Virus record (IMG/VR): IMGVR_UViG_3300037294_000266 | Span: 1-64,000 of that record | DNA length: 64,000 nucleotides | Strand: one strand, 5' to 3' | Shown here: positions 4,690 through 57,534 of the stretch, one piece after another | Numbering within the stretch: the stretch's first letter is position 1 | Layout: each line of letters starts with the position of its first letter | Position numbers and translations under genes: made by a program | The notes under the pieces: generated by a model | The model's input: the letters and a program-made list of their open reading frames with translations, nothing else | What the model was told of the DNA's origin: nothing | Database searches by the model: none

Positions 4690-5313
4690 TTAAACGACTT
4701 CTTCAAGAACAGGCCACCAGCCACTTTCGTTACTGATGTAAGTGTCACCTGCAAATGAACCTGTCCGGATATTGCCTTTTGTACTGTTGCGACGGAGCTT
4801 AGCCGTTGGAGACCCTATGCGACTTTCCTTACAGAAAATAGAGAATCCATTACCAGACATGAATCCGAGAGTGGTCGCTGATAACTGCTCTAAACGAGGT
4901 CCTGTATAACTAGGATCACGGCCAGTACTGATCGAGTAGAACAGTTCATTGAACTCACAGTCATCATCATTCACGTTTGATTCTGTGGGATCGATCTCAG
5001 CACCTTGAAGGAGCCGACAGACATACTGTTTCCCGCCATAGTTAAATGTCTTGCCGAGAACCACCCCAGCCGCATTCAGCTGGTTCCATGACATCCCGTA
5101 ACGCATAGGGCCCTTAGAAATGTAACGTACCTTAGAACCCCTTTTAAACTTTATCCAGTCGCTGTCCGCCCGCGTGCCAGAAGTAAGGCCTACATACGCA
5201 GCCAGAGCAGATGAAGTGATTAGATTAGACGCTAAGACCACTCCCAGATACTCAAGAACTTCAACGACAGGCCCTTTCCGGATTCCAGCAGCAGCGGTTA
5301 ATTGTATTCTCAC
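4690..5313 (-). CDS. putative virion adhesin, WxKF...GW(R/W)PxLE domain; paralog of 24559..25233
   Basis: Shared motifs WIKF/WLKF, SWNQLNAAGV/SRDQLNAVGV, CRLL/VRLL, EFNEL/EWNRL, GWWPVLE/GWRPLLE; N-terminus MRIQLTAAAG. Confidence 0.6.
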   Translation of the reverse strand: MRIQLTAAAGIRKGPVVEVLEYLGVVLASNLITSSALAAYVGLTSGTRADSDWIKFKRGSKVRYISKGPMRYGMSWNQLNAAGVVLGKTFNYGGKQYVCRLLQGAEIDPTESNVNDDDCEFNELFYSISTGRDPSYTGPRLEQLSATTLGFMSGNGFSIFCKESRIGSPTAKLRRNSTKGNIRTGSFAGDTYISNESGWWPVLEEVV

Positions 5314-5324
5314 TTCAATGTTCC

Positions 5325-5945
5325 TTAAGGGGCAGTTGCAGAAGCTATAGCTTCAATCAAAACGACCTGTTCAGCAATCGTTGCATTGAGCCGAGTGATT
5401 TCGTTACTCAGTCGTATGATCGTCGCCGTATCCGTTTCATTCACTGCTACGGCATTCTCACGAGCCAGAGTCAACTGAGCATGTTTTGTTTCACTGACGT
5501 AATCTGTAGCAATGCCACGGGTTGGGGTGATGACAGGGTCGACACCGATCTTTGCCGTCACTGCTTCACGAATGGCTTCTGTTACATCGTCAATGTTCCG
5601 GTAGTCAGGCCACATACCAAGCGACACACCGATGATCAACCGACTGTAAGGAACGCTGCCCATGTTCGGATATGCATCGACGTAGGTATCGGGTACATAA
5701 ATCAGATTACCTGCTTTATCTCGCAGACAAACGATCAACGCCCCTTCGGCTTTATCACGGTCAAGATCAGCCTGAGTCAGTTCGACTGGTGTGTAAACTA
5801 ACTTAAGAGGGTTCTGGTTACGGCTAATGACCTCATCGAATGAACGGTGAGCAATGACCGAATAACTAGCAGTGCTACTAACTGAGAACGGAGCTCTGAG
5901 TACGAATGATCCAGAGGCGCCCATTGGAGGAGTTTTACGTGCCAT
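5325..5945 (-). CDS. hypothetical protein, C-terminal coiled coil (likely late)
   Basis: 206-aa ORF; ATCCTATG core upstream at 5991-5998. Confidence 0.7.
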   Translation of the reverse strand: MARKTPPMGASGSFVLRAPFSVSSTASYSVIAHRSFDEVISRNQNPLKLVYTPVELTQADLDRDKAEGALIVCLRDKAGNLIYVPDTYVDAYPNMGSVPYSRLIIGVSLGMWPDYRNIDDVTEAIREAVTAKIGVDPVITPTRGIATDYVSETKHAQLTLARENAVAVNETDTATIIRLSNEITRLNATIAEQVVLIEAIASATAP

Positions 5946-5990
5946 ATTAAATCTCTACCCAAAGAAAAAAAGAAAGGGCTGTTAAGCTGT

Positions 5991-5998
5991 CATAGGAT
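5991..5998 (-). promoter_or_regulatory. putative late promoter (ATCCTATG)
   Basis: TATG is the known phiKZ late core; ATCCTATG also at 16745(+), 18009(+), 54830(-), 58051(-), with variants at 12894(+), 32507(-), 61917(-). Confidence 0.55.
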
Positions 5999-6039
5999 AA
6001 CCAAAATAAAAGAAGGGGTGGGGCCGAAGCCCCACCTTA

Positions 6040-6603: not shown

Positions 6604-6644
6604 AGTGGTTATAAAGGGCTACTTCGGCAGCCCTTGTCATTAGT

Positions 6645-6673
6645 AGAATGTATTGTTGAAAAACTTTCGAATC
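6645..6673 (-). promoter_or_regulatory. putative early promoter
   Basis: TTCGAA-N13-TACATT on minus strand. Confidence 0.65.
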
Positions 6674-7451
6674 AATACGGACGAATGCCGATTGGTTTAT
6701 CATTACGGTCGTAGCAGATCGGATATTCGCAGAAACCACCTGCTGCTTGAACTGTAGTTTCCTGAACAACCGGCAGATAGTTACGCAGTTCAGCCTTTGG
6801 CACCTGTTTGCCATTGATGAAACATGAGTCGTCTAGCTGCGGCGCGCAGCGAGCTTCTTTGACCACTACCCCAGCATCCTCTTGGGTTTCAATCTTACCG
6901 CTCTTCCAAGTAGCGTAGCCGCCGTCATAGTGACGATCCATCTCCCAGACGATGCCGTCTTCTGGAACATTGGCATCTTGGTAGAACTGATGAAGGATAT
7001 TGCCTGCTTCACGGTACGAAACAGCCTCACCACCAAACCCAGGACCGGTATCGAACAGGTAGGCTACTGGTTTACCGTCACTGCTTTCGCTGATGTAGTA
7101 CCAGATCGACAGCCGGGCCCAGATGTCATCAGGATAGAAGCCAGCCTTATAGGTCTTGGCATTACATTTGCCATTGCGGCACTGGACGCCCATGTGGTTG
7201 GAGTAACGGATATTGCGTTGAGTCTGTGGGTCCCATTCTTCTATGTCACGAGGAATGCTCAACCAAGAACACAGAAGGAAGTCGGCAGCACCTGGGCGCT
7301 GATTGACTTTACATGGAATGGCTTCAGGCAGGCCTTCCTTAGAAAGTTCATTCGGAAATAACCGCCCACCACCTTCGTACGCCACACTGGCAGTAGCGAC
7401 ATTTGCCAGCAGTGTAATGACAACACCCATTAACATGATTGACTTTTTCAT
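6672..7451 (-). CDS. exported Cys-rich protein with signal peptide
   Basis: MKK + hydrophobic stretch + ATA/ASVA cleavage region; 8 Cys. Confidence 0.65.
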   Translation of the reverse strand: MKKSIMLMGVVITLLANVATASVAYEGGGRLFPNELSKEGLPEAIPCKVNQRPGAADFLLCSWLSIPRDIEEWDPQTQRNIRYSNHMGVQCRNGKCNAKTYKAGFYPDDIWARLSIWYYISESSDGKPVAYLFDTGPGFGGEAVSYREAGNILHQFYQDANVPEDGIVWEMDRHYDGGYATWKSGKIETQEDAGVVVKEARCAPQLDDSCFINGKQVPKAELRNYLPVVQETTVQAAGGFCEYPICYDRNDKPIGIRPY

Positions 7452-16687: not shown

Positions 16688-16800
16688 CTAAAAGTCTCGT
16701 CGTGGTGACTACTGCCATGACGAGACTATGTCTGTTAGTAATGAATCCTATGCACGGTTGCGTGTGTAGTCACACTCCCCATGATTTCGAGGAACTCCGA

Positions 16801-17922
16801 ATGAGTAGCTCTTTTGTTGCTAAATCTGGCAAGGGTATCTTGCTGAATGCTATCAACCGCGGTATCGCTCTTGGCGAAAGCGGCGTTCAACTCCTGCCAG
16901 CCGACATTGTATTCGGTGACGTAGAAGGCTCTACCGACGAAAGTCGCGAATCGCAAGTGACTTTCGTTGGCGCTGAGGCCAGTCGTTTTGAAGGCAGCGA
17001 AGCTGTTGTTTACTTCGACCGCATTGACATTGGTCAGGTGTTCTTGGATGCCGGCGTTGAAGTTGTCGAAGTCGGTGGTGAATTGACTTCCATTGCCGAT
17101 GTTGTTGCTGCTGTTAACAGCAAGCATTCGGCCGGCTTCAGTGAAGAAGACATCGATCAGTCTGGCGACTTCGATCCTGAAGCATCGTCGGTACTATTGT
17201 CGACTCTCTCGACCTCGCACGGTTACAAAGGCGAGCTGCTCGTTCAGATCACTGCTGAAGATACTGGCGAAGGCGAACCTGTCGATCCGGAATTGCCGCC
17301 TGCCGTACCTGAATACGTCGTAGCGCCGACTGTCACTTCTGGTTCCATTAATGCTAAAGGCCAGAAAGAAGACGGCACCATGCTCGCAGGCACTGGCAAT
17401 CCAGTGGGAGAAATGACGGTTGCTTCTAACGGCGAACTCGAACTCTCCCTGAGCGCACGTGTTTGGAAGTCTGGCGATTTGCCAATTGCACAAGACGGTC
17501 ATTACGACGTAGTGATTGACGATGCCGCTGGCGATTGGAACTTCCCGTTCTCAATGAGTCTTCTTCAAGAAGAGCGCCCGGTTACTGAACTGTACGACAT
17601 CATCCTGACCATGCAATCTGTTGAGTCGAGTGTATCGCTTCCGTTCAATCTGTCTCGTGATGAAGGCGGCGTGTTCCACTTCATTAACGAAGAGTACAGT
17701 ATCGACATCAGCGATAGCGCTACCACAGCGCCAGGCGACACCGTTCAGAACATCCAACGTCTGACTTTCTATAAGCCTGTAATGGGTGCGATGTCACTCA
17801 GCACTAACGGTTCGCCTATCGGCGACTTCATTCTTACCTTGTCGGCCACTCGCCGCGAAGGTGAAGTTGAAGCCGTTGTCTGCGAGATCTCGGTTAACGT
17901 CCAGATCGAAGCTCAAGCGTAA
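16801..17922 (+). CDS. virion structural protein
   Basis: LLNAIN...FDRID N-terminal domain resembling 23027..23584; ATCCTATG upstream; start moved to MSSSF (GAGGA RBS). Confidence 0.65.
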   Translation: MSSSFVAKSGKGILLNAINRGIALGESGVQLLPADIVFGDVEGSTDESRESQVTFVGAEASRFEGSEAVVYFDRIDIGQVFLDAGVEVVEVGGELTSIADVVAAVNSKHSAGFSEEDIDQSGDFDPEASSVLLSTLSTSHGYKGELLVQITAEDTGEGEPVDPELPPAVPEYVVAPTVTSGSINAKGQKEDGTMLAGTGNPVGEMTVASNGELELSLSARVWKSGDLPIAQDGHYDVVIDDAAGDWNFPFSMSLLQEERPVTELYDIILTMQSVESSVSLPFNLSRDEGGVFHFINEEYSIDISDSATTAPGDTVQNIQRLTFYKPVMGAMSLSTNGSPIGDFILTLSATRREGEVEAVVCEISVNVQIEAQA

Positions 17923-18059: not shown

Positions 18060-18572
18060 ATGTCTGAGGTAGAAAATCCGTGGACAGCGACGATCGGTCA
18101 ACTCACACCCATTGACTCTAACCTGTTATCTGTTGAAGACAGTGTCGAAATCACCGTCTCTACTCGCGTAGACGGCGGCGAAGGACTGGCTAAGAAAACT
18201 TACCGTACTTCGATCGGCGCTATCTTAGGTATTTTTGCTGCAAGGCGGGATAACCCAAATCAGGTCACAGCTGAACAAGTAGGTTCATACACGGTCCAAG
18301 CGATCACGGATCTATTAAGGGAGAAGTTGGGTGTAGACGATGTTGCTGTAGACGCACTTAAGTTAGATGGCAAGACTCGTAGTGAGATCATTGCGGAGGC
18401 TCGTGAAGGGGTTTCGTATGACTCGCAGAATCTTGGCGGGCGACCAGCAAGTGCGTACGTTCTGGTAGATGATTACCTCGCGGGAATTGTTGAAGTCAAG
18501 GAATATACCGATGGACTTGGTTATTGTTTGGTTGACATTATGAACGATGAGGCACAGTCACTAGGCGGTTAA
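18060..18572 (+). CDS. tail fibre-associated protein
   Basis: RRDNPNQVTAEQVG and VDALKLDGKT motifs shared with the next gene. Confidence 0.65.
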   Translation: MSEVENPWTATIGQLTPIDSNLLSVEDSVEITVSTRVDGGEGLAKKTYRTSIGAILGIFAARRDNPNQVTAEQVGSYTVQAITDLLREKLGVDDVAVDALKLDGKTRSEIIAEAREGVSYDSQNLGGRPASAYVLVDDYLAGIVEVKEYTDGLGYCLVDIMNDEAQSLGG

Positions 18573-18690
18573 ACTGCCGACTTCATGTAGAGGTCGGTAT
18601 CGTATGAGGTCAGGTCTTTTATTAAACGAGATCTGGTCACAATGGGGAGATCAATGCATCCCCCAAACTTAGGTTAAGAGGAATGCGATA

Positions 18691-21255
18691 ATGTCAATGA
18701 ACAATGCTGCGTTGGAACTGGCTCTACGGGCAGCGATGTCTCGCCTGACCCTCGCTGTAGCCAACCGCGACGCTCCAAACTCCCTGAAACTCGAGGGTCT
18801 GACCCTCGCCCAGGTAACTGCAACTATCCTGGCCGGTACCGCGTCTAACGCCACCCTCTTCGACGGCAAGACGTACGCTGAAGTCATCACTGCTGCCACC
18901 AGCGGCAACGCTGCTGACATCGACGCTCTGGAAGCTGCCTTCGCTACTTTCATCGCTCGTACCGACAACCCAAACAGCGTAACCAAAGCCCAGGTTGGCC
19001 TTGGCGCAGTTGAGAACTACGGCATTGCCTCCCAGGCTGATGCTGATGCGAAAGCTGCTGACAAGTACGTCACGCCTTCGATTGCCGACTACATGGTTCA
19101 GAAGGCCGTTGACGCTCTCGTTGGCGCGGCTCCTGAAACCCTGAACACCATCTCCGAAATCGCAGCCGCGTTGGGCGACGATCCGGACATCATCAACACC
19201 CTGCTGACTGCAATCGGTACCAAAGAAACTCCAGCCGGTGCCCAGGCAAAAGCTGATGCTGCTGTAACTGCTGCTGCTGCCGATGCCACCACCAAAGCTG
19301 ACGCTGCTCAAGCTGCTGCTATCGCTGCTGCTGCTCTGGACGCGACTTCTAAAGCTGACGCTGCCCAGGCTGCCGCCATTGCTTCTGGTGAATCGTACAC
19401 TGACACCGCTATCGCTGGTGTTGGCGCTTCGTTGGAACGTGCTACTCAGGCTGAAGCCGAAGGCGGTACTGACAACGTTAAACTGATGACTCCTCTGAGC
19501 TCTGCTCAGGCGATCGCAGCACTGGGCGCTACACTGTTCTTGGGTGTTGGTGCCACCGCAGTTGACTCGGCATTGCTCGAAGGCCAGACTCTGGCTCAGG
19601 TTATCGCCACTGCTCAAGCCGGCGTGGACATGTCCAACGTCGTGCAGAAGACTGACGATTTCGCTGCTTACAGCGTTGGCGAAGAAATCATCGGCGACCT
19701 CGTAACCAGCCTGCGTGCCGCAGACACTGCTAACGTTGATGCCATCACCGTTGTTTCCGATGCATTGGGTGCGTTCATCGCCTCCAAAGCAACTGAAGCC
19801 GAAGCCATTGCCGGTACCGATGATGTCAAGTACATCACAGCTCTGGCCCTTAAAGCCAAAGTTGACGCGGCTATCAACTCGGTGGTTGATGGTGCTCCAG
19901 AAGCCCTTGATACCCTGAAAGAACTGGCCATTGCTCTGGCTGATCAGGATAACGAAGTTGCGGCTATCGTTACCGTTCTCGACACCAAGCAAAACGCTGC
20001 GCAGGTTTCCGCTGCTATCGCCGCTGTTACCGATCTGCTGGCTGCTCGCGTTGATGCGTTGGAAGCTGAAGACGTTGTTGTTGACGGTCGTTTGGATGCG
20101 CTGGAAGCTGCTGTAGGTAGCGGTTCCAACTTCATGCAGACTGGCGTCACTGATCTGGGTACTAACCCAGTCGCGTTGGCATCCGACGTTCCAGAAGCTG
20201 CTCCGCGTTCGCTGAAAGCCATTGTTGATGCGCTGGAAGCTGCTGACGTTGTTGTCAACGATCGCATCACTGGTGAAGTTGCCGGCGTTAACTCGGCCAT
20301 CACTGCTGTTTCCGATGCTGCCGCTGCTGCTAACACACTGGTAGCTGATCGCGCCACTGCTCTGGAAGCTGCCGATGTTGTCTCTGACGGTCGTCTTGAC
20401 GTTCTGGAAACTGGCATCGCTACCAAGCTTGAGCAGAATGGCTCGTTGGACGCTGCTACCGTAAACCAGGACGTGGAAGGTACGCCTACCCAAGTTCTGA
20501 TCGGTACTGTATTGTCCGCTCTGGAAGCGCACATCACAGCCGTTGAAAATGGTGGTGCTGGTGACCTGGCTACGCTGCAGTCTGCTTTCAATGACTTCGT
20601 AGCTGCTAAAGCTACTGGCGCTGAAGTAATCGCCGGTACTGACGATGTTAAGTACACCACGTCGTTGGCCGTTAAAGCTGCCATCGTTGATGCAATCGAT
20701 GCTCTGGTTGGCGCTGCTCCGGCTGCGCTGGATACCATCAACGAGATCGCTGCTGCGCTGAACAACGATCCTAACGTCATCAACAACTTGATGACTGCGA
20801 TTGGTACTAAGCTCGATGCCACTGCTACCGCAGTTGACTCGGCTAAGCTGGGCGGCGTTGTTGCTGCTGACTACGCTACCAAAGTGTACGTCGACGATAC
20901 CGTTGAAGCTCTGACTGAAGGCTTCATTGCTTCGGCAGTAGATCTGGCCCCTAACTACAAGGGCGATCTGACCATCGCTAACTTGGGTTCTGGTTCGTAC
21001 GGTTTCAACGCCAGCGGTTCTATCGCTCCTGCTACCTACGGCTCAATCACTGTACAAGCTTTCCATTGGAACGCTTCGGTATTGACTGTTAAGGTTCTTG
21101 GCGACAAGACTGCTGCCGGTATTGACGCAGCCATCGTTAACTCGTTGGTTCTCAATGCCCCAGTGTCGGCTACCTTCGCTAGCGGCTCGACCACATTCGT
21201 GTTCACCGTTGACAAGGTTCTGCCTACCACTGGTGTAGTACCAGTAGCGTTCTAA
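18691..21255 (+). CDS. long tail fibre protein with internal repeats
   Basis: 854 aa, Ala-rich; repeats LVGAAP.xL.TI.EIAAAL..DP, ATxAE...GTD.VK (x3), DSALLEG/LKLEG. Confidence 0.85.
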   Translation: MSMNNAALELALRAAMSRLTLAVANRDAPNSLKLEGLTLAQVTATILAGTASNATLFDGKTYAEVITAATSGNAADIDALEAAFATFIARTDNPNSVTKAQVGLGAVENYGIASQADADAKAADKYVTPSIADYMVQKAVDALVGAAPETLNTISEIAAALGDDPDIINTLLTAIGTKETPAGAQAKADAAVTAAAADATTKADAAQAAAIAAAALDATSKADAAQAAAIASGESYTDTAIAGVGASLERATQAEAEGGTDNVKLMTPLSSAQAIAALGATLFLGVGATAVDSALLEGQTLAQVIATAQAGVDMSNVVQKTDDFAAYSVGEEIIGDLVTSLRAADTANVDAITVVSDALGAFIASKATEAEAIAGTDDVKYITALALKAKVDAAINSVVDGAPEALDTLKELAIALADQDNEVAAIVTVLDTKQNAAQVSAAIAAVTDLLAARVDALEAEDVVVDGRLDALEAAVGSGSNFMQTGVTDLGTNPVALASDVPEAAPRSLKAIVDALEAADVVVNDRITGEVAGVNSAITAVSDAAAAANTLVADRATALEAADVVSDGRLDVLETGIATKLEQNGSLDAATVNQDVEGTPTQVLIGTVLSALEAHITAVENGGAGDLATLQSAFNDFVAAKATGAEVIAGTDDVKYTTSLAVKAAIVDAIDALVGAAPAALDTINEIAAALNNDPNVINNLMTAIGTKLDATATAVDSAKLGGVVAADYATKVYVDDTVEALTEGFIASAVDLAPNYKGDLTIANLGSGSYGFNASGSIAPATYGSITVQAFHWNASVLTVKVLGDKTAAGIDAAIVNSLVLNAPVSATFASGSTTFVFTVDKVLPTTGVVPVAF

Positions 21256-21327: not shown

Positions 21328-21918
21328 GTGAGAAAGATGAGTCAAGCTCTGTTGCTACAGGCGATGCAGAAACACGCCCTGGCTGTTAGAACGTTGTTGG
21401 CCACTGGTGTGGCAGGCGATGCAGCCAAATTGGAAGGCCTCACACTGGCGCAGATTCTTGCCAGTGCTGAGAACACCGCCAAACTGTACACCGATGCCGA
21501 AGTCCTCGACATGGTCGAAGGCAACGCTCTGATCGAAGCAGTCGATGCAGCTATTGCTGAATTGAGCGCTCCGATCGGTGGTGATTTCTACACGGCCATT
21601 ACCGAGCGTAGTGTTGCCCTGGGCGCTGGTGCTGCGATCAATGTATCGCAAGCCAACCATTACACCAAAACGGTAACTGGCAATACAACCTTCAGCGTGA
21701 CCAATGCCCCTGCGGCTGGCCGTGTTGGCGCGTTCGTACTGCACCTTACCAATGCTGGCGCTTCGGTTGTTCAGTGGTGGGCTAACGTTCGCTGGGCTGA
21801 AGGCCAGGCTCCAACCCTGTCGGCCGCTGGCCGTGACGTAATCGCCTTCTCCACCATGGATGGCGGCGCTACGTGGGACGGTTACCTGCTCGGCAAAGAC
21901 ATGAAGGCTGCTGCATAA
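21328..21918 (+). CDS. short tail fibre/adaptor with C-terminal beta domain
   Basis: N-terminal KLEGLTLAQI shared with long fibre; C-terminal VRWAEGQAPTLS..GRDVIAFSTMDGGATWDG fibre-tip-type domain. Confidence 0.7.
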   Translation: MRKMSQALLLQAMQKHALAVRTLLATGVAGDAAKLEGLTLAQILASAENTAKLYTDAEVLDMVEGNALIEAVDAAIAELSAPIGGDFYTAITERSVALGAGAAINVSQANHYTKTVTGNTTFSVTNAPAAGRVGAFVLHLTNAGASVVQWWANVRWAEGQAPTLSAAGRDVIAFSTMDGGATWDGYLLGKDMKAAA

Positions 21919-21982
21919 GCTCCTTCTTAACGTCATAGAGCACGGTGGCTAATGCCACCGTGCTCTTTATTTGGTATCTGAT

Positions 21983-22495
21983 ATGCGTAATCTTCTGCTG
22001 GCGGCTGCGGGCCGTAAGACTGGTGTTATTGACAAGACACCTTTCATTAATCAACTGTCGTCTACCGCTGGGCTGTCTCTTTTAGGAGGGGTTGAAGTTT
22101 ATGCTCCTGCCAATCAGTTCGATTCGCCAGGAGATGGCAAGCGTTATGATTTTTCCAGTTCATTGGCTGGTAAGAAAGTTAAACGCATCAAAGCCTCTTT
22201 CCGATACACCGCCAACACCAGCGCTCTCAGTGCATTTAACTTTGTTGTAGCTGAGTCTGGCAAGGCTCTCGTTTTGGCACTTGGTGTTTACGACGAATGG
22301 AACGCACAGACTGGATTCCGTTTAGTTGACGATTCCAATAACAGGACCTTGAGAACAAGTAATTGGAATGACTTCCTAGAGGTCACGTTTGACACGCCAG
22401 TTAAAATTGAAGATATTTACGTAAAAATCGGTGGTAGATCGGGGCTTACATACGCTCCAATTTACGTAAAAGACTTTGAAATAGAGTTCGTATAA
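21983..22495 (+). CDS. putative adhesin with MRNLLLAAAG N-terminus
   Basis: ATG at 21983; beta-rich; directly follows adaptor gene. Confidence 0.6.
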   Translation: MRNLLLAAAGRKTGVIDKTPFINQLSSTAGLSLLGGVEVYAPANQFDSPGDGKRYDFSSSLAGKKVKRIKASFRYTANTSALSAFNFVVAESGKALVLALGVYDEWNAQTGFRLVDDSNNRTLRTSNWNDFLEVTFDTPVKIEDIYVKIGGRSGLTYAPIYVKDFEIEFV

Positions 22496-23026: not shown

Positions 23027-23584
23027 CTAATCAAGACTGCCTAATGGGATCACGCGAATCTGTCCTTCGTCTGTGACACGAAGACGTCCTCCATCAGTGA
23101 AGCGACGGATGCCCTCTGACCAGAAGATCTCAATTCGCTTACGACCGATGTAGATGTACGACTCTTCTTTGGCAAATATATCGACATGAGTAAAATGAGC
23201 CAGTGATGCAAACGGATCATTGATATCAATGTCAAACTCGCCATCGACCAGATTGAAATTCCCGTCCAGGTAGGCGACAAGCGCCTCTTTGTCAGAGATA
23301 TTGAACGCGTCTTTCAGGTCTATCTTGAATGTAGGGTAGTGGGTGTCAATGTCAGCACGGGCGTAGAACATGTCTTTCTCGCCTTTGTACGGACTGCCTT
23401 CCTTAGCCTTGATCAAGATAATGGAGTTATCGCCGTGTTCATCTAGGTCCATGGACCTAGGGGTTTCAATATCAACCATGGTGCCGTTGATAGGAACTCG
23501 ATTGGTCCGATAGATCAAAGCAAAGAAATTCTCTAGCGCTGTCTTTTCAGGATCAAACTTGAAGTCGTCTGTTTTACAGGCCAT
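23027..23584 (-). CDS. virion structural protein
   Basis: LIYRTN...SPYKG...FYARAD...SYIYIG domain related to the 16801 N-terminus; C-terminal R.TD.G repeats. Confidence 0.6.
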   Translation of the reverse strand: MACKTDDFKFDPEKTALENFFALIYRTNRVPINGTMVDIETPRSMDLDEHGDNSIILIKAKEGSPYKGEKDMFYARADIDTHYPTFKIDLKDAFNISDKEALVAYLDGNFNLVDGEFDIDINDPFASLAHFTHVDIFAKEESYIYIGRKRIEIFWSEGIRRFTDGGRLRVTDEGQIRVIPLGSLD

Positions 23585-23596: not shown

Positions 23597-24541
23597 TTAA
23601 TTAAGATATGTCATGTCGATTGTGACGATCTGATTACTTCTTGCAGCGTCGTCATACAAAGCCTGACCCGGATAAGAAACGCAACCACCGACAATATGTA
23701 ACTCATTTGTGGATTCGTCAATGTGACTCGTGTGGACATAACGACTGGTCTCAAACGTCACTTTGAATTGACGTGGTTTTGCAGAGAGATTCAACAGGTC
23801 GTATCTATCAATGGCACCAGTGCCGCTGATCACGTAAATAAAACGCCCGCGTGAAATTACAGATCCCCATACAGGAGATCGTGGAATAGAAAAGGTGCTC
23901 CACGTGTTAGTGGCAGTGTTGTAAATCTGCATAACCGGGTTTGCAACAGAACCCATAATGAACAGTTTATTATCGTACACTGCCGCAAAATGACCAATTG
24001 CTGTAAACGGCATGTCTGCCATCACATCCCACGTGTTAGTGGCAATGTTGTAAACATGACATTTCCGCGTAGCTGCTTCGTTAGACGCCCAACCGCCCAG
24101 GCGATAAATCTTTCCAGCATTATGTAGAATGATACTGGAGTGGCGATATGGTGTCGGTGCGTCGGCAAGGGGGGTGAGTGTACTCGGCGATGCAGCAATG
24201 GCCCGGCGACGGAAGGTGCCGTTGTAAGCCCCATTGTGACCATCTAGAAAATAAAGGTTGTCGTCAACCCCAATACCACTTGCCCACGTGTAAGTAGACG
24301 GCAATGCTGTTGATGATTTTTGTTTAGTACGTGTATTGAAATGAAGCGCTGTTGTCGGGTATCTGGCAGCGCCCACACCGCCGGAAAGACCACCCAGCAC
24401 TATCAGATCTCCTGTCAGCTTATTGTAACCACCAGCAAAGTTACTCCGACTCCCAGACATGGTATTGATTGATTTTATTGGGACTAATCGGATAGAATCT
24501 ATTTTGAATCTTTCTGCCGCTGCCAGATATAGGCCGTTCAT
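23597..24541 (-). CDS. Kelch-repeat beta-propeller protein (putative adhesin)
   Basis: GKIYRLGG, YNIATNTW, YNTATNTW repeats; start MNGLYLAAAE with GGAG RBS. Confidence 0.8.
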   Translation of the reverse strand: MNGLYLAAAERFKIDSIRLVPIKSINTMSGSRSNFAGGYNKLTGDLIVLGGLSGGVGAARYPTTALHFNTRTKQKSSTALPSTYTWASGIGVDDNLYFLDGHNGAYNGTFRRRAIAASPSTLTPLADAPTPYRHSSIILHNAGKIYRLGGWASNEAATRKCHVYNIATNTWDVMADMPFTAIGHFAAVYDNKLFIMGSVANPVMQIYNTATNTWSTFSIPRSPVWGSVISRGRFIYVISGTGAIDRYDLLNLSAKPRQFKVTFETSRYVHTSHIDESTNELHIVGGCVSYPGQALYDDAARSNQIVTIDMTYLN

Positions 24542-24558
24542 TATAATCTCCGATATAT

Positions 24559-25233
24559 TTAGTTTACAAGCTCTAGCAGAGGGCGCCAGCCCATGCGGGA
24601 AGATGCGTCTGAGAACGTGGTATAGCCGAGATAAGTAACTGTACCGGGAGCCCCGCCGTACCCACGACATACTGCATAATTAGGATTGGCACCATGGACT
24701 TCTTTACAGATTGTAAAACTACCTTGCGACGGAGTGGCTCCTACACCAAGATCGGCATCTGAATACTCTGCCCAGTTTAAGTTACCTCCCTCTGATGTAA
24801 AGCTATCTGCTGCTACGCCATTACAGATATGATACATCAAGCGGTTCCACTCAGATCCATGTGATGCAGGAGCATCTATGCCGACGTTGTTCTGACTTGG
24901 ATCGGAGAAAGATCCTGAGAGGAGCCTTACTTTATACGACTTCCCACCAATAACAACCTGACGAGATCCAGTAATTACACCGACTGCATTCAACTGATCA
25001 CGACTTATTGAATGACGATAAGAACGTTTAGCGATATATTTAATCTTGCCGTCCGTCACATCGAAAAACTTAAGCCATCCGGCAGTAGAGTTCTGACTAA
25101 TGCCTGCTGTAATGCCCATGGCGACCGCTAACGCGTTTCCATTGATAAACTGATCGGCAGCCACTTCACCAAAGAATGTTGTCTTTGTAGGAAGTCTGCC
25201 AATACTTGAAGTCGCCAGTATTAAATTTCTCAT
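24559..25233 (-). CDS. putative virion adhesin, WLKF...GWRPLLE domain
   Basis: Paralog of 4690..5313; start moved to MRNLILATSS. Confidence 0.65.
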   Translation of the reverse strand: MRNLILATSSIGRLPTKTTFFGEVAADQFINGNALAVAMGITAGISQNSTAGWLKFFDVTDGKIKYIAKRSYRHSISRDQLNAVGVITGSRQVVIGGKSYKVRLLSGSFSDPSQNNVGIDAPASHGSEWNRLMYHICNGVAADSFTSEGGNLNWAEYSDADLGVGATPSQGSFTICKEVHGANPNYAVCRGYGGAPGTVTYLGYTTFSDASSRMGWRPLLELVN

Positions 25234-25261: not shown

Positions 25262-25627
25262 TCATAGTATTTCACCCCCTGTTACGATGAGATATCCATT
25301 GTCGTCTGCAATCTCCACCATGTGAGAAACAAATAAGTGTCGATGGCAAAACTTACCCGCTGTACAGTAACAAGCTGCAGCAATAGGACCTTCCCGTTGA
25401 AGGAATGATTCAAAGACCTCAGGAGAGGCTCTAAACTGCTCTCTAAGACGCTTTAAGTAAAGTTCCGTATATAGGTCGTCAGAAACCTCACCGCGCTTGT
25501 ATGCCCATAGTACAGAAGCTTCTGGTGCAAAGGGTTTAAACCCCGACTTAACAGTGATGTCGAACAATTCAATGTTTCTAGCCTTAGCCTTACGCCACTG
25601 AGGTATTGCGATTGTATAAAGTTCCAT
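25262..25627 (-). CDS. DUF488-like protein with CYC...CHR motif
   Basis: FAP...YTELYL...ACYCTAGKFCHRH. Confidence 0.55.
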   Translation of the reverse strand: MELYTIAIPQWRKAKARNIELFDITVKSGFKPFAPEASVLWAYKRGEVSDDLYTELYLKRLREQFRASPEVFESFLQREGPIAAACYCTAGKFCHRHLFVSHMVEIADDNGYLIVTGGEIL

Positions 25628-35080: not shown

Positions 35081-35126
35081 GTAATCCTCATTACAGGTTA
35101 TGTAAGGTTAACTCCTTACTCGTGAC

Positions 35127-35156
35127 TATCATGTATCGTTGAAAATAATTGGAATC
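35127..35156 (-). promoter_or_regulatory. putative early promoter
   Basis: TTCCAA-N13-TACATG. Confidence 0.7.
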
Positions 35157-35192
35157 GACATAGAGGAGGGCCTGAGCCCTCCCTTATGCTGT

Positions 35193-35495
35193 TTAGCATT
35201 TGGCAGCGGCCATGGCATAGAACTCATGGTTGATCTTTATCAACTGATCCAACGTCATGGCGGTATGGAGTTCGTCCATGAACACACCAGTGATGGCTTG
35301 ACAAGTGACCATGAGATGTTTAGCTGATTCGAACTCTTCGCCCTGCAACGTCCCCTTAGGTGCTCGCAGTATCAACTGTAAGAACGTATTGAGATGACTG
35401 GCGGTAATCCGTGCTGCCAGCCAACGTTGCGGGTTGTCATTGTATCCAGGAGGGACAGGGGTTCCTATGGATGTCGTTACACTGACCATGCTCAT
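35193..35495 (-). CDS. hypothetical protein
   Basis: 100 aa in operon. Confidence 0.6.
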   Translation of the reverse strand: MSMVSVTTSIGTPVPPGYNDNPQRWLAARITASHLNTFLQLILRAPKGTLQGEEFESAKHLMVTCQAITGVFMDELHTAMTLDQLIKINHEFYAMAAAKC

Positions 35496-35498
35496 GAT

Positions 35499-36119
35499 TT
35501 ACCCCTGTAATGAAAATGACCACGTAACCGCTTTCAAGGCGATACGGTCATCGGCAGCAACGGCTGCCAACATTTGTTTCTCAGCGCCGTGGCGGCGGGC
35601 TGTGATGGTTGCCAACGCTGGGCTGAAGATCGCATCATTGGTCAGTACTCGTTCAGCAAGACCATATATCCCGCCTGAAATACCTTCCATAGTGCGTTGA
35701 GCAGCAAGATCATAGATGAACGGCGCTAAGGCCCGTGGGAAGTCCTCGACCAGTCGAGTATCGTCCTCAGCCAACCAGGCCATCAATTTGACGGATTCAT
35801 CACGCTGGATAGACCACGTAATCACTTCAGACAATGGATAGGTCTGCTTCAAATACGCCACCATTATCTCGTAATCATTGTTCATGACTGCTAAGATGTT
35901 CTGATAGACACTCTGGATACTGGCTACTGGGAATGGGGTATCTGGCGCGCGTGTACTTGGAACATTACCCACACCTGCCTCGAGTATCCGGCCTTCCATC
36001 ATTTCTTGACGAAGTTCTTCAAACCGTTCTTCAGTCACCTCGACTGCATCTACCCAGATTTTGTTATCTTTGTTAAAAACCAATCGACTCGGAGAGAAAT
36101 AATACACTGGCGTCACCAT
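35499..36119 (-). CDS. tail fibre assembly protein; paralog of 52997..53584
   Basis: YFSPS, YPxxE..TW..Q..E, RVL.N..I.SP, TA.RH..E, TWSF shared. Confidence 0.75.
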   Translation of the reverse strand: MVTPVYYFSPSRLVFNKDNKIWVDAVEVTEERFEELRQEMMEGRILEAGVGNVPSTRAPDTPFPVASIQSVYQNILAVMNNDYEIMVAYLKQTYPLSEVITWSIQRDESVKLMAWLAEDDTRLVEDFPRALAPFIYDLAAQRTMEGISGGIYGLAERVLTNDAIFSPALATITARRHGAEKQMLAAVAADDRIALKAVTWSFSLQG

Positions 36120-36159
36120 TAGATAAAGTTTAAATCTATAGGATAGGTACTACAAAAAT

Positions 36160-36960
36160 AAAAGAAAAAAGGCTTTGGGGTAACTCTTTGGCTAGCGAGC
36201 CCAGGGATGATCAATCCCCAGTCGTTAGCAATCTAAGAGTTCCCCGTGACCCTACAACATGACACTGACCTAAGACGGCCTTGGATTAAAATCCAATAAG
36301 TTCGAACTTAATCGATTTGAGTTTGGTTCGGTCTGTTTATACCGAGACTAGTCTTAGCTAACGAGTACCTTAAACACGCGCTTTGAGTCCTCTCGGTTGC
36401 TGAGGCTGCAATACTGAAACCCAGTGTGGCACACAATCCAATCAGACGATCGCCGTTCGAAGTTCCCACCTGCTCGTTCTTTTACAAACGAGTGCGAACG
36501 AATGATCCATTTCCACAGATCATCTTCCGAGTATGGGTTATCTTGAGGGGCTTCGGCTGATGAAGTTTTCCAGTACTGGACTGGTTCTTCGATGGCGCAT
36601 GCGACACTACAGTTCAGTAAGGCAGCGAGAGCAATTGCTCCGATGCTGATCGTTAACGCTCCATGGTCCGGGTTGGGATTGATCTTCTCGTCAGTATACT
36701 GGTAATACAGCTCACGGGAGCCACCCTTACGACCGCCTTATGATCGTGGGTGGCGGCGATGCCTGTTAGTGCGCTGATGGAGATGCCTGTAGATCGTAGA
36801 GGGGTCAGCTTAGCCAGAGGCCCCAGCCTCAAACTGCCAATCGAACGCACCAGCGATACAACTCGCCAGATTGTACGTGACCAAAATAGACTTCCAAGTA
36901 ACCCACCTGAGAGGAATCCGAACATTGCTGTCCTTATGATTCAGTTATCGGGAGTTTCAC
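36160..36960 (-). ncRNA. candidate ~800-nt multi-domain structured non-coding RNA
   Basis: Largest gene-free gap; more than 12 stems including a long-range 13-bp helix; GNRA loops on minus strand; TATG at 36960-36963; terminal stem plus U-tract. Confidence 0.65.
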
Positions 36961-55085: not shown

Positions 55086-55147
55086 GATGAATCTCCTTTA
55101 AGCGCATAAAAGAGAGAGTGGAAATCCACTCTCTCTAGATTTAGATG

Positions 55148-55258: not shown

Positions 55259-55269
55259 GTCAATACTCC

Positions 55270-55389
55270 TTATTCTGAAATAGTTTTGCTTACAGCAGCC
55301 AGTGCATCATGAATAGCCTTGTTACGAGACTGTTCAGTGATACCCACGACAACCCAGTAGCCAACAATAATACCTAGAAATACTTTCAT
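55270..55389 (-). CDS. 39-aa membrane peptide (not in ORF track)
   Basis: MKVFLGIIVGYWVVVGITEQSRNKAIHDALAAVSKTISE*; AGGAG RBS; first gene after promoter 55441. Confidence 0.7.
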   Translation of the reverse strand: MKVFLGIIVGYWVVVGITEQSRNKAIHDALAAVSKTISE

Positions 55390-55440
55390 ACTGATCTCCT
55401 AGACCACGGTTAGAGGAAGATCGTTCTTCCTATTCACCTG

Positions 55441-55470
55441 TACTATGTATTGTTGAAATAAATTCGAATC
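55441..55470 (-). promoter_or_regulatory. putative early promoter
   Basis: TTCGAA-N13-TACATA. Confidence 0.7.
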
Positions 55471-55518
55471 GCATTTCTAGAATTCTATGGGGTTGGTGTT
55501 TAATCGAGAGGATTCAAA

Positions 55519-57534
55519 ATGAGACAGTTAATGATGGCTGCAGCCGTCCAGTATGCAAACCGGTTTCTTCTTGGGACTGTGTCAGATTCCATTTGGGACA
55601 AGACAGTCGCCCGCGTCATTCAGGAAAATGATGTCACCTTCGACATTAAAGCCGATCGAGAAAGCGTCAATAACGTGGACATCGGTGCAGGACGATTCGG
55701 TACTCAATGTCCTCGTTTCAGCACGTCTGCCAAACGCCTTACGGTTACGGGCAGTCCGTTCGCTCTTTATTCAGACTTCACTATAGAAGGTCATTTCTAT
55801 TTTGAAGATATCGAGGCAAGTACTAACCAGTACATGATGGACTACGGTACTAACGGATTTATTCTCCGTTATTATGGTGGCGGGATCGCAGTGTACAACG
55901 GTGGTGGTGTCATTATTCAGAGCGGCATAAAGCCTCAGAATAATCGCTGGTATCATGTTGCGGTGGTTCGTTATAACCAAACCCTGACCCTTTACATCGA
56001 TGGGGTATCTGTCGGGTCGGCGGTCTTTACCACTGGACTTGCGTACACTTCATACACCCTCGGTAATTATGGTGGTGGTGGGTATGCAGTACGTGCACGC
56101 ATTGACCAATTCCGTGTGGTTCAGGAAGCACTATATACCGGGACGTTTACCGTGCCGGCGGCACCTTTTACAGTCGGCGGTCAAGAAGCAACGTACGATC
56201 CATATTGGAGTAATACAGTCGCCTTACTCGACAGTGCTAATGGCAGCACTCTACTTGACAGTACTGGTAAGTACACCGTTGAGAACGTAGGCGGGGCTTC
56301 AATCATTTCTTCGGGTGTTAAGATTGGGGCAGCTGCGGTTCAGTTTACAGCAGCTGATCAATATCTACGTATCCAAGACTCACTGAACGAATTCGATTTC
56401 GGGACTGTGAACTGGACTGTTGAGGCATGGGTAAAGCCAAGTGCCAAGCCAACAGGTGTGTTGTATCTAATTGGTCGTGGTACTGCGGCTGCAATGGGCG
56501 GTTGGTCACTGGTCCTGAACAACATGCGTCCTCAGTTACGTTGGTCCACGACAGGGACCAGTTGGAACAAGGTCACGCCACTTGATAACGATACGGCACT
56601 TGAGACAGGTCGCTGGTATCACATCGCCATTGCTCGTCTTGTCGATACGTTCCAATTGTTCATCAACGGAAGACTGCATTACAGTGTTGCTGCTGCCGAT
56701 ACGTTGGCGGCATCTACACTTCCCGTCACCATTGGTAATGGTGAAGGCGGTACAGCACAGTTCTTGGGTGTGATGGACAGTATCCGCATCACGCGTGGCA
56801 TCTCGCGATACCATAGTGAGTTCACTCCTAAACTGAAGACCCGTTATGCATCGAACGGCAATGTGATACCGTCCTCTAACGATCCATATTGGCCGCGCGT
56901 AGTCGGATTGCTTGAATATATAAGTGACATTGGCGCTGGACCCGACCAGTTCTCAGTCGTACTCAAACGAACTGGAGCTGTAATTGATCCAGCGACTCCA
57001 TTGTTTGGCAAGCCGAGCATGCGGGTGACGTCTGGTTCGGGAGGCGGTCTTAATTATTCAAATGGGTCTAAAACTACACTAGGTAGTCTTGACAACACCG
57101 TCGAAGGATGGGTCAATACTGACTACACAGGCGGTACAGTTGCGTTACCGATCATTGGACAGTACCACGCCACGATAACAGGAGCTTGGGTATTGGGTGT
57201 TTACGCAGGCAAAGCCCTGTTCTTTATTCGTGGTGGCAATACGTTACAAGGTACGAAAAACATCAATGATGGACAGTGGCACCATGTCGCCGTATCCATT
57301 CGATCAGGTGTCATGTACCTGTATGTTGATGGCGTGCTTGAAGCTCAAACTTCCTGGGGTGTGGCACCTACCTATAATGGAAACATTCAGGTAGGTTACA
57401 ACATCAGCGTCGAAACTCCGGCTGGATTTCGAATAAATGTCGGGCGTGTAAGAATCACTAAAGGACGAGGACGGTACACTAGCAACTTCGTAGTTGATGA
57501 AGACACAGTACAGCTGTCGAGTCTGGCAGCATAA
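55519..57534 (+). CDS. triple LamG/concanavalin-A-like lectin adhesin
   Basis: Three repeats of T(I/V)E...W(Y/H)H(V/I)A...L(Y/F)(I/V)(D/N)G...R(V/I); DPYW linkers; N-terminus MRQLMMAAAV. Confidence 0.85.
   Translation: MRQLMMAAAVQYANRFLLGTVSDSIWDKTVARVIQENDVTFDIKADRESVNNVDIGAGRFGTQCPRFSTSAKRLTVTGSPFALYSDFTIEGHFYFEDIEASTNQYMMDYGTNGFILRYYGGGIAVYNGGGVIIQSGIKPQNNRWYHVAVVRYNQTLTLYIDGVSVGSAVFTTGLAYTSYTLGNYGGGGYAVRARIDQFRVVQEALYTGTFTVPAAPFTVGGQEATYDPYWSNTVALLDSANGSTLLDSTGKYTVENVGGASIISSGVKIGAAAVQFTAADQYLRIQDSLNEFDFGTVNWTVEAWVKPSAKPTGVLYLIGRGTAAAMGGWSLVLNNMRPQLRWSTTGTSWNKVTPLDNDTALETGRWYHIAIARLVDTFQLFINGRLHYSVAAADTLAASTLPVTIGNGEGGTAQFLGVMDSIRITRGISRYHSEFTPKLKTRYASNGNVIPSSNDPYWPRVVGLLEYISDIGAGPDQFSVVLKRTGAVIDPATPLFGKPSMRVTSGSGGGLNYSNGSKTTLGSLDNTVEGWVNTDYTGGTVALPIIGQYHATITGAWVLGVYAGKALFFIRGGNTLQGTKNINDGQWHHVAVSIRSGVMYLYVDGVLEAQTSWGVAPTYNGNIQVGYNISVETPAGFRINVGRVRITKGRGRYTSNFVVDEDTVQLSSLAA

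What the first reader, a model, noticed from the sequence alone, without database searches (positions are those of the whole stretch)
4690..57534. Possible plug-and-socket adhesin system: five dispersed genes share an N-terminal MRxLxxAAA-like peptide
Seen: MRIQLTAAAG (5313-), MRNLLLAAAG (21983+), MNGLYLAAAE (24541-), MRNLILATSS (25233-) and MRQLMMAAAV (55519+). They head four unrelated binding-type folds: WLKF/GWRP domain (twice), an unknown beta domain, a Kelch propeller and triple LamG. One of them sits right after the short fibre/adaptor 21328..21918, whose C-terminal beta domain occurs once in the window. Inference: the peptide is a docking tag that loads interchangeable receptor-binding heads onto one socket, giving mixed-adhesin virions without any DNA rearrangement. 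The motif is short and three of the starts were reassigned by eye.
Basis: inference. Interest (0 to 1): 0.75.

Follow-up and report, generated by a model that had tools for sequence, protein, structure and literature searches.

The report
Shared address tag on jumbo-phage adhesins
Seven scattered genes of this phiKZ-like jumbo phage encode unrelated sugar-binding domains that all begin with the same ten-residue peptide, most likely an address tag that loads interchangeable host-recognition proteins onto the virus particle, although the site it plugs into is still unknown.

Summary
The window is the first 64 kb of a 266,646-bp chimallivirus. All five N-terminal MRxLxxAAA peptides are present, at starts that independent gene callers also chose, and the genome holds two more. 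Conservation acts on the protein, not the DNA. The cargo domains are unrelated glycan-binding folds: C-type-lectin-like "WLKF/GWRP", Kelch, LamG and a CBM-like sandwich.

The tag recurs in related phages: DT01, two IMG/VR genomes, PhiPA3, 201phi2-1, phiKZ, PhiEaH1 and a Ralstonia phage. Its sequence follows the phage lineage rather than the cargo, so it evolves in concert within a genome. It occurs once per polypeptide, is followed by a variable linker, and is modelled as disordered.

Homologues are virion proteins by mass spectrometry. The tagged Kelch protein gp298 of phiKZ is a published host-specific adsorption factor. A virion-docking tag on interchangeable accessory adhesins is therefore the best reading.

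The proposed socket, the C-terminal domain of the 21328 fibre, is not shown. Gene order supports it in one lineage only, other tag-bearing lineages lack that fibre, and the one complex prediction gave no answer. The closest known principle is the docking peptide of Klebsiella podophage RBP2.

The parts
4690..5313 (-). Tagged WLKF/GWRP protein (207 aa, GTG start). The tag MRIQLTAAAG is encoded at 5284-5313. It lies directly downstream of the DUF7194 gene.
   Evidence: The orthologue in G003 sits in the same slot; G001 has a tagged Kelch gene beside the same DUF7194 gene.
21983..22495 (+). Tagged CBM-like beta-sandwich protein (170 aa). The tag is MRNLLLAAAG.
   Evidence: The AF2 model has pLDDT 78 with residues 1-11 below 50. 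Foldseek matches CBM29/6/32 with prob 1.0 and TM 0.45-0.5.
23597..24541 (-). Tagged Kelch propeller protein (314 aa). The tag is MNGLYLAAAE, preceded by a GGAG ribosome-binding site.
   Evidence: A tagged Kelch protein in G001 starts MNGLILSAAA.
24559..25233 (-). Tagged WLKF/GWRP protein (224 aa) with a C-type-lectin/FGE-like fold. The tag is MRNLILATSS.
   Evidence: The AF2 model has pLDDT 83 with residues 1-13 below 50. VIA-align gives Z 7.9 to PvdO, 7.6 to TvpA and 7.3 to the Bd2740 fibre tip.
55519..57534 (+). Tagged triple-LamG protein (671 aa). The tag is MRQLMMAAAV. It is a solitary gene on the strand opposite to its neighbours.
   Evidence: DT01 has LamG proteins that start MRIHLMAAAI.
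21328..21918 (+). Short fibre. The likely true start is the ATG at 21337, giving 193 aa that begin MSQALLLQ.
   Evidence: Homologues were found only in own, DT01, G001 and G003, each followed by a tagged gene. No relative with a solved structure was found by sequence.
21937..21966 (+). Terminator-like hairpin (13-bp stem plus a T run) between the fibre gene and the tagged gene.
   Evidence: Similar hairpins occur at the same place in DT01 and G003.
23027..23584 (-). Small DUF7941 protein (185 aa), the last gene of the unit 25627 > 25233 > 24541 > 23584. It was a candidate alternative socket.
   Evidence: DUF7941 forms head-to-tail filaments in Goslar (PMC13742148). The complex prediction gave no answer.
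16702..17922 (+). DUF7941 protein (likely start near 16798). It heads the module of a 170-aa protein, the long fibre, the short fibre and the tagged gene.
   Evidence: The same gene order occurs in DT01 genes 00007 to 00004.
18060..21255 (+). A 170-aa fibre-associated protein (18060-18572) and the long tail fibre (18691-21255, 854 aa).
25262..25627 (-). A 121-aa core chimallivirus protein, the phiKZ gp151 homologue. It is the first gene of the unit that carries two tagged genes.
25263..25266 (-). TATG late-promoter-like motif 33 nt upstream of the 25233 start. The same motif at the same distance lies at 55486-55489(+) before 55519.
   Evidence: The phiKZ late-promoter consensus is TATG (PMC4666361). 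This is a weak, four-base motif.

Best explanation
The first 9-10 residues form a virion-incorporation (docking) tag. In this phage the tag is M-R/N-x-L-x-x-A-A-A, often followed by basic or Gly-rich residues and then a linker of variable length. It is shared by a family of small, probably monomeric, glycan-binding accessory adhesins of chimalliviruses. Each tagged protein is made late in infection and is tethered by its free, flexible N-terminus to a common site on the virion periphery, probably the outer baseplate or fibre network. It then presents its lectin-like head to the host surface.

Because only the tag is needed for loading, new heads can be gained, split, fused or swapped without changing the particle. 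One virion can therefore carry several specificities.

Shown here: the tag exists and is under protein-level selection. It is independent of the cargo and specific to the phage lineage. It occurs once per polypeptide and is predicted to lie outside the fold. Taken from published work on homologues: they are present in virions and one has an adsorption phenotype. Inferred: the tag is what attaches the proteins. Unknown: the partner site.
For: Seven tagged genes occur in this genome on four cargo folds.

Tags also occur in DT01, G001, G003, PhiPA3, 201phi2-1, phiKZ, PhiEaH1, Ralstonia FLC1-1B and metagenome contigs, on further cargo types (Gly_rich_2, discoidin).

Tag similarity follows lineage, not cargo. 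The mean score is 10.9 for same lineage and different cargo, against 2.1 for different lineage and same cargo; 0 of 5000 permutations reached that difference.

Third codon positions and the upstream DNA are not conserved.

Linker length varies by 0-20 residues. The tag is modelled with low confidence and outside the domain in both models.

Fused WLKF+Kelch proteins (PhiPA3 gp080 and gp083, phiKZ gp83) have a single N-terminal tag, whereas the split Kelch gene here has its own.

Of 70 diverse WLKF representatives with an N-proximal domain, 48 start with the tag.

201phi2-1 gp452 and gp456 are virion proteins by mass spectrometry.

PhiKZ gp298 starts MFELLLSPDI and carries a Kelch domain. It is a low-abundance virion protein needed for adsorption to two wild strains and dispensable on PAO1.

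A precedent for peptide docking exists: the RBP2 conserved peptide of KP32, K11 and KP34 (PMC13352976).
Against: No binding partner has been identified. The only complex prediction scored 0.04, which the tool reports as no answer: it is not evidence for or against binding. The chains were the fibre trimer, DUF7941-E and the tagged 21983 protein.

No protein other than WLKF itself is present in every tag-bearing genome and absent from tag-less Goslar.

The high-resolution phiKZ atlas of 40 proteins does not mention gp83 or gp298 in its main text, so the attachment site has not been seen.

Concerted evolution of tags could also come from within-genome recombination of N-terminal modules.

No experiment has removed a tag.
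Confidence: 0.55

Rival explanations
1. One reading: the tag plugs into the C-terminal domain of the short fibre 21328-21918. That fibre would be the single socket for all tagged heads.
For: The short-fibre gene is followed immediately by a tagged gene in four related genomes, with different cargo each time. Own has the CBM-like protein, DT01 a 397-aa unknown, and G001 and G003 WLKF proteins. The fibre's C-terminal domain is highly conserved. Adhesins that bind a fibre tip are known, for example T2/S16 gp38 on gp37 (from my own knowledge).
Against: No homologue of this fibre was detected in PhiPA3, 201phi2-1 or phiKZ, all of which have tags. A lineage-B contig carries three tagged genes with no fibre nearby. 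Six of the seven tagged genes here are not next to the fibre. Three sites per trimer would have to serve 7-9 proteins. The complex prediction gave no answer. A hairpin terminator separates the two genes.
Confidence: 0.12
2. The tag is a self-association element. The short hydrophobic N-termini of several tagged proteins bundle together, or with fibre N-terminal helices, into homo- or hetero-oligomeric bouquets. In this model they do not plug into a dedicated socket.
For: The core is Leu/Ala-rich and is modelled as a short helix (residues 2-8) in the 21983 model, at low confidence. The N-termini of the fibres have similar ALLL(A/Q)S stretches. PhiKZ fibres are built from paralogues that share N-terminal segments forming a six-helix bundle (PMC13250141). 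No separate socket protein shows the right phyletic pattern.
Against: Nine residues are short for a stable bundle. The bouquet would still need something to attach it to the virion.
Confidence: 0.12
3. The tag is a transient sorting or processing signal and is not a structural joint in the mature particle. Possibilities include recognition by an assembly chaperone, a capsid-targeting sequence like that of the T4 internal proteins, a protease site, or a membrane/export signal.
For: The tag is strictly N-terminal and about 10 residues long, like the T4 capsid-targeting sequence (from my own knowledge). Some tags end in A-x-E (MNGLYLAAAE here, MNPLMIAASE in G001), which resembles the S/A/G-x-E site of the phiKZ prohead protease (from my own knowledge).
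Against: The Glu is absent from most tags. The hydrophobic core is only 6-8 residues and is followed by charged or Gly-rich linkers, which is too short for a Sec/Tat signal peptide (read directly from the sequences). Lectin-like cargo and the gp298 adsorption phenotype place the proteins on the outside of the particle.
Confidence: 0.12
4. The shared N-terminus has no function of its own. It is a by-product of cassette exchange, in which new domains are recombined behind an existing start region.
For: Tagged genes sit in variable slots, and the cargo differs between related genomes at the same slot.
Against: The upstream DNA and third codon positions are at random-level identity, while the amino acids are conserved. 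The motif persists across Pseudomonas, Erwinia and Ralstonia phages and in 48 of 70 diverse family representatives. Conservation stops after about residue 10; identity at residues 11-20 is 0.06.
Confidence: 0.05

Closest known systems
Conserved docking peptide of RBP2 and T4gp10-like branching domain of RBP1 in Klebsiella podophages KP32, K11 and KP34 (PMC6872550, PMC13352976)
   Same: A short conserved N-terminal peptide, separate from the functional domain, is necessary and sufficient to load an exchangeable receptor-binding protein onto the virion. Heterologous heads can be fused behind it.
   Different: There the peptide is about 29 residues on one trimeric depolymerase per phage, and the partner is known. 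Here the tag is about 10 residues on 2-9 probably monomeric lectin-like proteins per genome, in a jumbo myovirus. The partner is unknown and no branching domain has been identified.
phiKZ gp83 and gp298, 201phi2-1 gp452 and gp456, PhiPA3 gp080-083 (virion structural proteins; gp298 is a host-specific adsorption factor)
   Same: They are direct homologues or analogues with the same WLKF and Kelch cargo. They have the same kind of N-terminal tag (MFELLLSS..., MIDLLM...), are present in virions, and lie dispersed away from the tail genes.
   Different: Those annotations and papers treat the proteins one at a time. The shared tag, and the fact that it unites several cargo folds, is not mentioned in the texts I could search.
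Chimallivirus DUF7941 head-to-tail filaments, the 'fiber cloud' of Goslar (PMC13742148)
   Same: It is a chimallivirus-specific peripheral system that displays carbohydrate-binding domains. A flexible peptide of one protomer docks on a globular domain of the next. DUF7941 genes flank tagged genes in this window.
   Different: The tagged proteins have no DUF7941 domain. The DUF7941 linker consensus does not resemble the tag. Goslar has DUF7941 proteins but no tags. POP15 has a tag-like WLKF protein but no DUF7941.
phiKZ gp131, gp133, gp134 and gp135: paralogues with a shared N-terminal segment that co-assemble into hetero-hexameric fibres (PMC13250141)
   Same: Paralogues share an N-terminal attachment part and differ in their distal domains.
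   Different: That shared part is a whole domain plus a helix. The gp131-like genes of this genome (229-233 kb) do not carry the tag.
T4 capsid-targeting sequence on internal proteins (from my own knowledge)
   Same: A roughly 10-residue N-terminal address label is sufficient to bring foreign cargo into the particle.
   Different: It targets the inside of the prohead and is cleaved off. Here the cargo and the homologue's phenotype point to the virion exterior, and no consistent cleavage site exists.

Membership tests
phiKZ gp83 / 201phi2-1 gp452 family (WLKF/GWRP virion proteins) | Sequence homology of the WLKF...GWRPxLE domain | tested here: met
   tblastn gave 145 phage records, including PhiPA3 gp080 (E 4e-35) and 201phi2-1 gp452 (E 2e-24). 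PhiKZ gp83 scored E 1.4e-6.
phiKZ gp83 / 201phi2-1 gp452 family (WLKF/GWRP virion proteins) | Presence in purified virions | not testable with these tools
   Known only for homologues, from the mass-spectrometry notes in the 201phi2-1 record. No proteome exists for this uncultured phage.
Peptide-docked secondary RBP (KP32 type) | Short conserved N-terminal peptide that is separable from the functional domain | tested here: met
Peptide-docked secondary RBP (KP32 type) | A primary RBP with a T4gp10-like branching domain that receives the peptide | not tested
   No dedicated search for a gp10-like domain was run. Pfam found nothing on the fibres at 18691 and 21328.
Peptide-docked secondary RBP (KP32 type) | The peptide is required for virion incorporation | not testable with these tools
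   This needs phage genetics. The in-silico complex gave no answer.
DUF7941 filament proteins | DUF7941 N-terminal globular domain | tested here: not met
   None of the seven tagged proteins hits PF25613.
DUF7941 filament proteins | A peptide that docks on the DUF7941 N-terminal domain | tested here: inconclusive
   The complex with DUF7941-E scored 0.04, reported as no answer. The linker consensus is unlike the tag. Tags occur without DUF7941 in POP15, and DUF7941 occurs without tags in Goslar (PMC13742148).
Capsid-targeting or prohead-protease-processed proteins | A consistent protease site (S/A/G-x-E in phiKZ-like phages) after the N-terminal peptide | tested here: not met
   Glu at position 10 occurs in only a minority of tags.
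Sec/Tat signal peptides | A hydrophobic core of about 10 or more residues followed by a cleavage site | tested here: not met
   The hydrophobic run is 6-8 residues and is followed by Arg/Lys/Gly-rich linkers (read from the sequences). No signal-peptide predictor was available.
C-type-lectin / FGE-sulfatase fold (for the WLKF domain) | Structural similarity over the whole domain | tested here: inconclusive
   The top matches are consistent: PvdO Z 7.9, TvpA 7.6, CarF 7.4, EgtB, FGE, rhodocytin and Langerin. All are below Z 8 and the Foldseek E-value is 0.013 or worse.

The most novel reading that the evidence does not exclude
The tag may be a general, lineage-tuned address label of chimalliviruses (and perhaps other large myoviruses), by which any protein that carries it is displayed on the virion. 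The receiving site may be the WLKF lectin-like domain itself, or an unresolved flexible part of the outer baseplate. Tagged heads could then daisy-chain into a heterogeneous, evolvable adhesin coat. That would be a natural display system defined by ten residues.
Probability: 0.15. Interest if true: 0.85.

Novelty: new variant of a known kind. Interest (0 to 1): 0.62.

Why it matters
Host recognition by phiKZ-like jumbo phages is poorly understood. The cryo-EM papers on phiKZ and Goslar read here do not describe these proteins, and gp298 was only recently found by transposon screening as an unexpected adsorption factor encoded far from the tail genes.

A ten-residue signature that picks out the whole set of such accessory adhesins in any chimallivirus genome (2-9 per genome, on at least six cargo folds) has three uses. 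It gives a direct way to predict host-range determinants. It offers a simple handle for asking how these proteins are attached. If the tag is sufficient for loading, it is a compact module for studying the display of binding domains on jumbo phages.

It also explains why these genes can be scattered, split, fused and swapped freely.

Tried and rejected
1. DNA-level repeat or recombination site: rejected. Third codon positions and upstream DNA are at random identity.

2. Wrong starts: rejected. Exact products are on record from independent gene callers, and the DT01 GenBank annotation starts at the same Met.

3. DUF7941 N-terminal domain as a universal socket: not supported. The linker consensus differs from the tag. 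Goslar has DUF7941 proteins but no tag (PMC13742148), and POP15 has a tag-like protein but no DUF7941. The complex prediction gave no answer.

4. Phyletic profiling for a dedicated socket: only the WLKF proteins themselves are present in all seven tag-bearing genomes and absent from Goslar, so no candidate emerged.

5. Megablast of 8 kb of the window against the phage collection: no match.

6. PDB sequence searches for the WLKF protein and the fibre: nothing significant.

I rebuilt the alignment without them.

8. Literature searches for gp83, gp452 and DUF7941 found no description of the tag.

9. A mixed-lineage scoring matrix was too blunt and missed some tags. Genome-specific seeds worked better, but they pulled in a few doubtful hits (own 71604, POP15 115617, PhiEaH1 118980) that I do not count.


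Full report
WHAT THE WINDOW IS. The window is the first 64 kb of a 266,646-bp virus record. It encodes a 722-aa phiKZ-type major capsid protein (phrog_3231, E 5e-160). That protein is 80.7% identical to the capsid protein of Pseudomonas phage pPa_SNUABM_DT01 and about 30-35% identical to those of other chimalliviruses. The window also encodes ribonucleotide reductase, a DnaB-like helicase and an NAD-dependent ligase. The phage is therefore an uncultured phiKZ-like jumbo phage.

THE OBSERVATION. Scanning the whole genome found two more. One is 223393(+) MRIHLAGAAG, on a third WLKF/GWRP protein. The other is 250290(+) MRNILMAAAG, on a LamG-like protein.

The starts are sound. All seven proteins, beginning exactly at the tag Met, are on record as products of independent gene callers. 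The GenBank annotation of DT01 starts its homologues at the same Met: MRIHLMAAAI twice, MRIGYLAAAARR and MVRMLLPAAI.

In leave-one-out scoring, five of the seven tags rank within the top 1-7 of 4160 candidate start positions, and at most one of 65,308 non-start positions scores as well. MNGLYLAAAE and MRIHLAGAAG are weaker alone (ranks 15 and 11). Among the seven, nucleotide identity is 0.61 at codon positions 1+2, 0.28 at position 3 and 0.25 in the 30 nt upstream. Amino-acid identity falls from 0.46 at residues 2-10 to 0.06 at residues 11-20. So a ten-residue peptide is conserved, and it is not a DNA repeat.

THE CARGO.
- The Kelch and LamG assignments are confirmed by Pfam.
- The WLKF/GWRP domain has no Pfam family. 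Its AF2 model (pLDDT 83) gives a consistent set of C-type-lectin/FGE-like matches: PvdO Z 7.9, the DGR target TvpA 7.6, the Bdellovibrio fibre-tip domain Bd2740 7.3, then EgtB, FGE, rhodocytin and Langerin. All are below Z 8, so I treat the fold as probable rather than proven.
- The "unknown beta domain" of 21983 models as a beta-sandwich (pLDDT 78). It matches carbohydrate-binding modules CBM29, CBM6 and CBM32 with Foldseek probability 1.0 and TM 0.45-0.5.
- In both models the tag (residues 1-11 or 1-13) has pLDDT below 50 and lies outside the domain.
- An alignment of 17 WLKF proteins shows the tag, then a linker whose length varies by 0-20 residues, then the domain.

THE TAG IN OTHER PHAGES. 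I fetched whole genomes of relatives and scanned them. Tags head unrelated cargo in each of them:
- G001 has six WLKF proteins with tags of the type MNxL(I/L)(I/L)SA..RR, one more WLKF protein after the short fibre that starts MRIIRQAAAIRR, a Kelch protein (MNGLILSAAAYRRL) and two LamG proteins (MNILTTAAAFRRRM, MNILQLSADTTRRK).
- G003 has MNPLFIAAARQR, MIHALTIAAHQARIR, MLYALMMAASRRRQ and a Gly_rich_2 protein, MMHSMIMAAHQARRR.
- PhiPA3 has MFELLL(G/S) on WLKF and WLKF+Kelch proteins, and MFEILLSSGK on a 619-aa Kelch protein.
- 201phi2-1 gp452 and gp456 start MIDLLM and MIDLML.
- PhiKZ gp83 starts MFELLLSSGL and gp298 starts MFELLLSPDI.
- Erwinia phage PhiEaH1 has four consecutive tagged genes: MLEAILLGKK and MIEALLMGRR on LamG, MQELLLAGKK on WLKF and MLEMVMGGKK on Gly_rich_2.
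- Ralstonia phage FLC1-1B gp119 starts MFELLLSTRL.
- A metagenome contig adds a discoidin-domain cargo.
- Homologues of the 21983 protein carry either MRNVLLAAS-type or MLELLLAC-type tags.
- Goslar has neither WLKF proteins nor tags.

Tag similarity depends on lineage, not cargo. The mean score is 10.9 for same lineage and different cargo, 2.1 for different lineage and same cargo, and 10.0 for same lineage and same cargo. None of 5000 label permutations reached the observed difference. The sequences are related, so this count is not a true probability.

The WLKF family is very large: 2627 cluster representatives. Of the 70 top representatives whose WLKF domain is N-proximal, 48 start with a tag-like peptide, against 2% of control N-termini by construction of the threshold. 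Other family members carry an FN3-like or an Mtd_N-like fibre N-terminus instead of the tag. That is what one expects if these are alternative attachment modules.

ONE TAG PER POLYPEPTIDE. The window's adjacent WLKF (25233) and Kelch (24541) genes correspond to single fused genes in PhiPA3 (gp080, gp083) and phiKZ (gp83). PHROG 16120 matches both window proteins in successive parts of its profile. The fused proteins have one tag at the N-terminus and nothing tag-like between the domains. The split Kelch gene here has its own tag and its own ribosome-binding site.

Tagged genes also occupy variable slots. The position beside the DUF7194 and DnaB genes holds a WLKF gene in this phage and in G003, but a Kelch gene in G001. 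The unit gp151-homologue > [tagged genes] > DUF7941-E holds two tagged genes here, one in G001 and none in G003.

ARE THEY VIRION ADHESINS? The 201phi2-1 record states that gp452 and gp456 were identified in virions by mass spectrometry.

The phiKZ transposon study (bioRxiv 10.1101/2025.11.23.690004) reports the following for orf298. It is 1008 bp, has a Kelch domain and is present in the virion at low abundance. It is dispensable on PAO1. It is required for plaquing on, and adsorption to, two wild P. aeruginosa isolates. It lies away from the tail genes. I confirmed that PHIKZ298 (270649-271656, minus strand) is the protein that begins MFELLLSPDI. It is only distantly related to the window's Kelch protein (E 0.046). 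It is therefore an analogue with the same architecture, not an orthologue.

Several first genes of tagged units have an aatcCTATG-like motif 25-40 nt upstream; 25233, 55519 and 250290 all have it at -33. This matches the TATG consensus of phiKZ late promoters (PMC4666361). The evidence is weak, because 42 of 302 genes in this genome have a TATG in that range.

THE SOCKET. A 21328-type short fibre exists in this phage, DT01, G001 and G003, and in each it is followed directly by a tagged gene with a different cargo.

More evidence counts against it:
- No such fibre was detected in PhiPA3, 201phi2-1 or phiKZ.
- A lineage-B contig carries three tagged genes among small non-structural genes with no fibre.
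- Most tagged genes are elsewhere in the genome.
- A strong hairpin terminator separates the fibre gene from the tagged gene.

My own candidate was the DUF7941 N-terminal domain. In Goslar it is proposed to accept a flexible strand of the next protomer (PMC13742148), and DUF7941 genes flank tagged genes here. It fares no better. The DUF7941 linker consensus is unlike the tag. Goslar has DUF7941 proteins without tags. The vequintavirus POP15 has a tag-like WLKF protein (MLEILMADH) without DUF7941.

The score was 0.04 against a mark of 0.32, and the tool states that this is no evidence either way.

Phyletic profiling found no protein, other than WLKF itself, that is present in all seven tag-bearing genomes and absent from Goslar. 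So the partner is one of three things: a core structural protein, a lineage-specific protein, or the WLKF domain or the tags themselves. One tagged WLKF gene lies directly after the homologue of phiKZ gp157, the outer-baseplate ring protein, both here and in G001 (PMC13250141). That is a lead, not a result.

CONCLUSION. The general idea is the best-supported explanation: a short N-terminal docking tag that lets interchangeable glycan-binding heads be loaded on the particle. I give it about 0.55.

[quoted passage not shown] What appears new is the form it takes here, which I found described in none of the papers I could search: a ten-residue, lineage-tuned tag on many monomeric lectin-like proteins of chimalliviruses. 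The limits of this work are that no partner was found, no experiment has been done on the tag itself, and virion association is known only for homologues.

Noticed in passing
window 21937-21966 (+): A strong terminator-like hairpin (13-bp stem) lies between the short-fibre gene and the tagged gene. Similar hairpins occur at the same junction in DT01 and G003. It may set a low ratio of adhesin to fibre by read-through.
   Followed up: partly
window 23597-25233 (-): The adjacent WLKF and Kelch genes correspond to one fused gene in PhiPA3 (gp080, gp083) and phiKZ (gp83). This is a gene split or fusion in which the separated Kelch part has its own tag. The Kelch open frame runs 46 codons upstream of its start and overlaps the end of the WLKF gene.
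   Followed up: partly
window 16702-17922 (+), 23027-23584 (-); genome 256172-258651 (+): The genome has five or six DUF7941 proteins, the chimallivirus 'fiber cloud' family described for Goslar. The related genome G001 has more than a dozen paralogues in one cluster.
   Followed up: partly
window 25263-25266 (-), 55486-55489 (+); genome 250257 (+): An aat(a/c)cTATG motif lies exactly 33 nt upstream of three tagged genes. It resembles the phiKZ late-promoter consensus, and similar motifs occur before tagged units in six other phages.
   Followed up: partly
genome 98508 (-) and 71604 (-), outside the window: Two further N-termini look tag-like. MRNSILASALAISS heads a 409-aa acidic coiled-coil protein, and a TTG-started MRIMLAKALGYT heads a 106-aa ORF. 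I did not count them as members.
   Followed up: no
window 308-2584 (+): A 758-aa open frame lies antisense to the major capsid gene 200-2368 (-). It is almost certainly not a gene.
   Followed up: no
L009 9701-10609; G003 35042-36860; PhiPA3 222535-225466: Some WLKF proteins replace the tag with an Mtd_N-like fibre N-terminus or an FN3-like domain. The FN3-WLKF genes cluster directly after a tagged WLKF gene in G003 and PhiPA3.
   Followed up: no
L104 2474-3085 (Pectobacterium phage POP15, Vequintavirinae): A WLKF protein that starts MLEILMADH occurs in a 153-kb phage that is not a chimallivirus and has no DUF7941. The tag may therefore extend beyond Chimalliviridae.
   Followed up: partly
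window 6672-7451 (-): A 259-aa protein starts MKKSIMLMGVVITLLANVATAS, which looks like a classical signal peptide. It is conserved in G001 and G003.
   Followed up: no
P0102-P0105 (representative proteins): Some WLKF-family representatives are giant proteins of 1400-2600 aa with 5-8 tandem WLKF domains.
   Followed up: no
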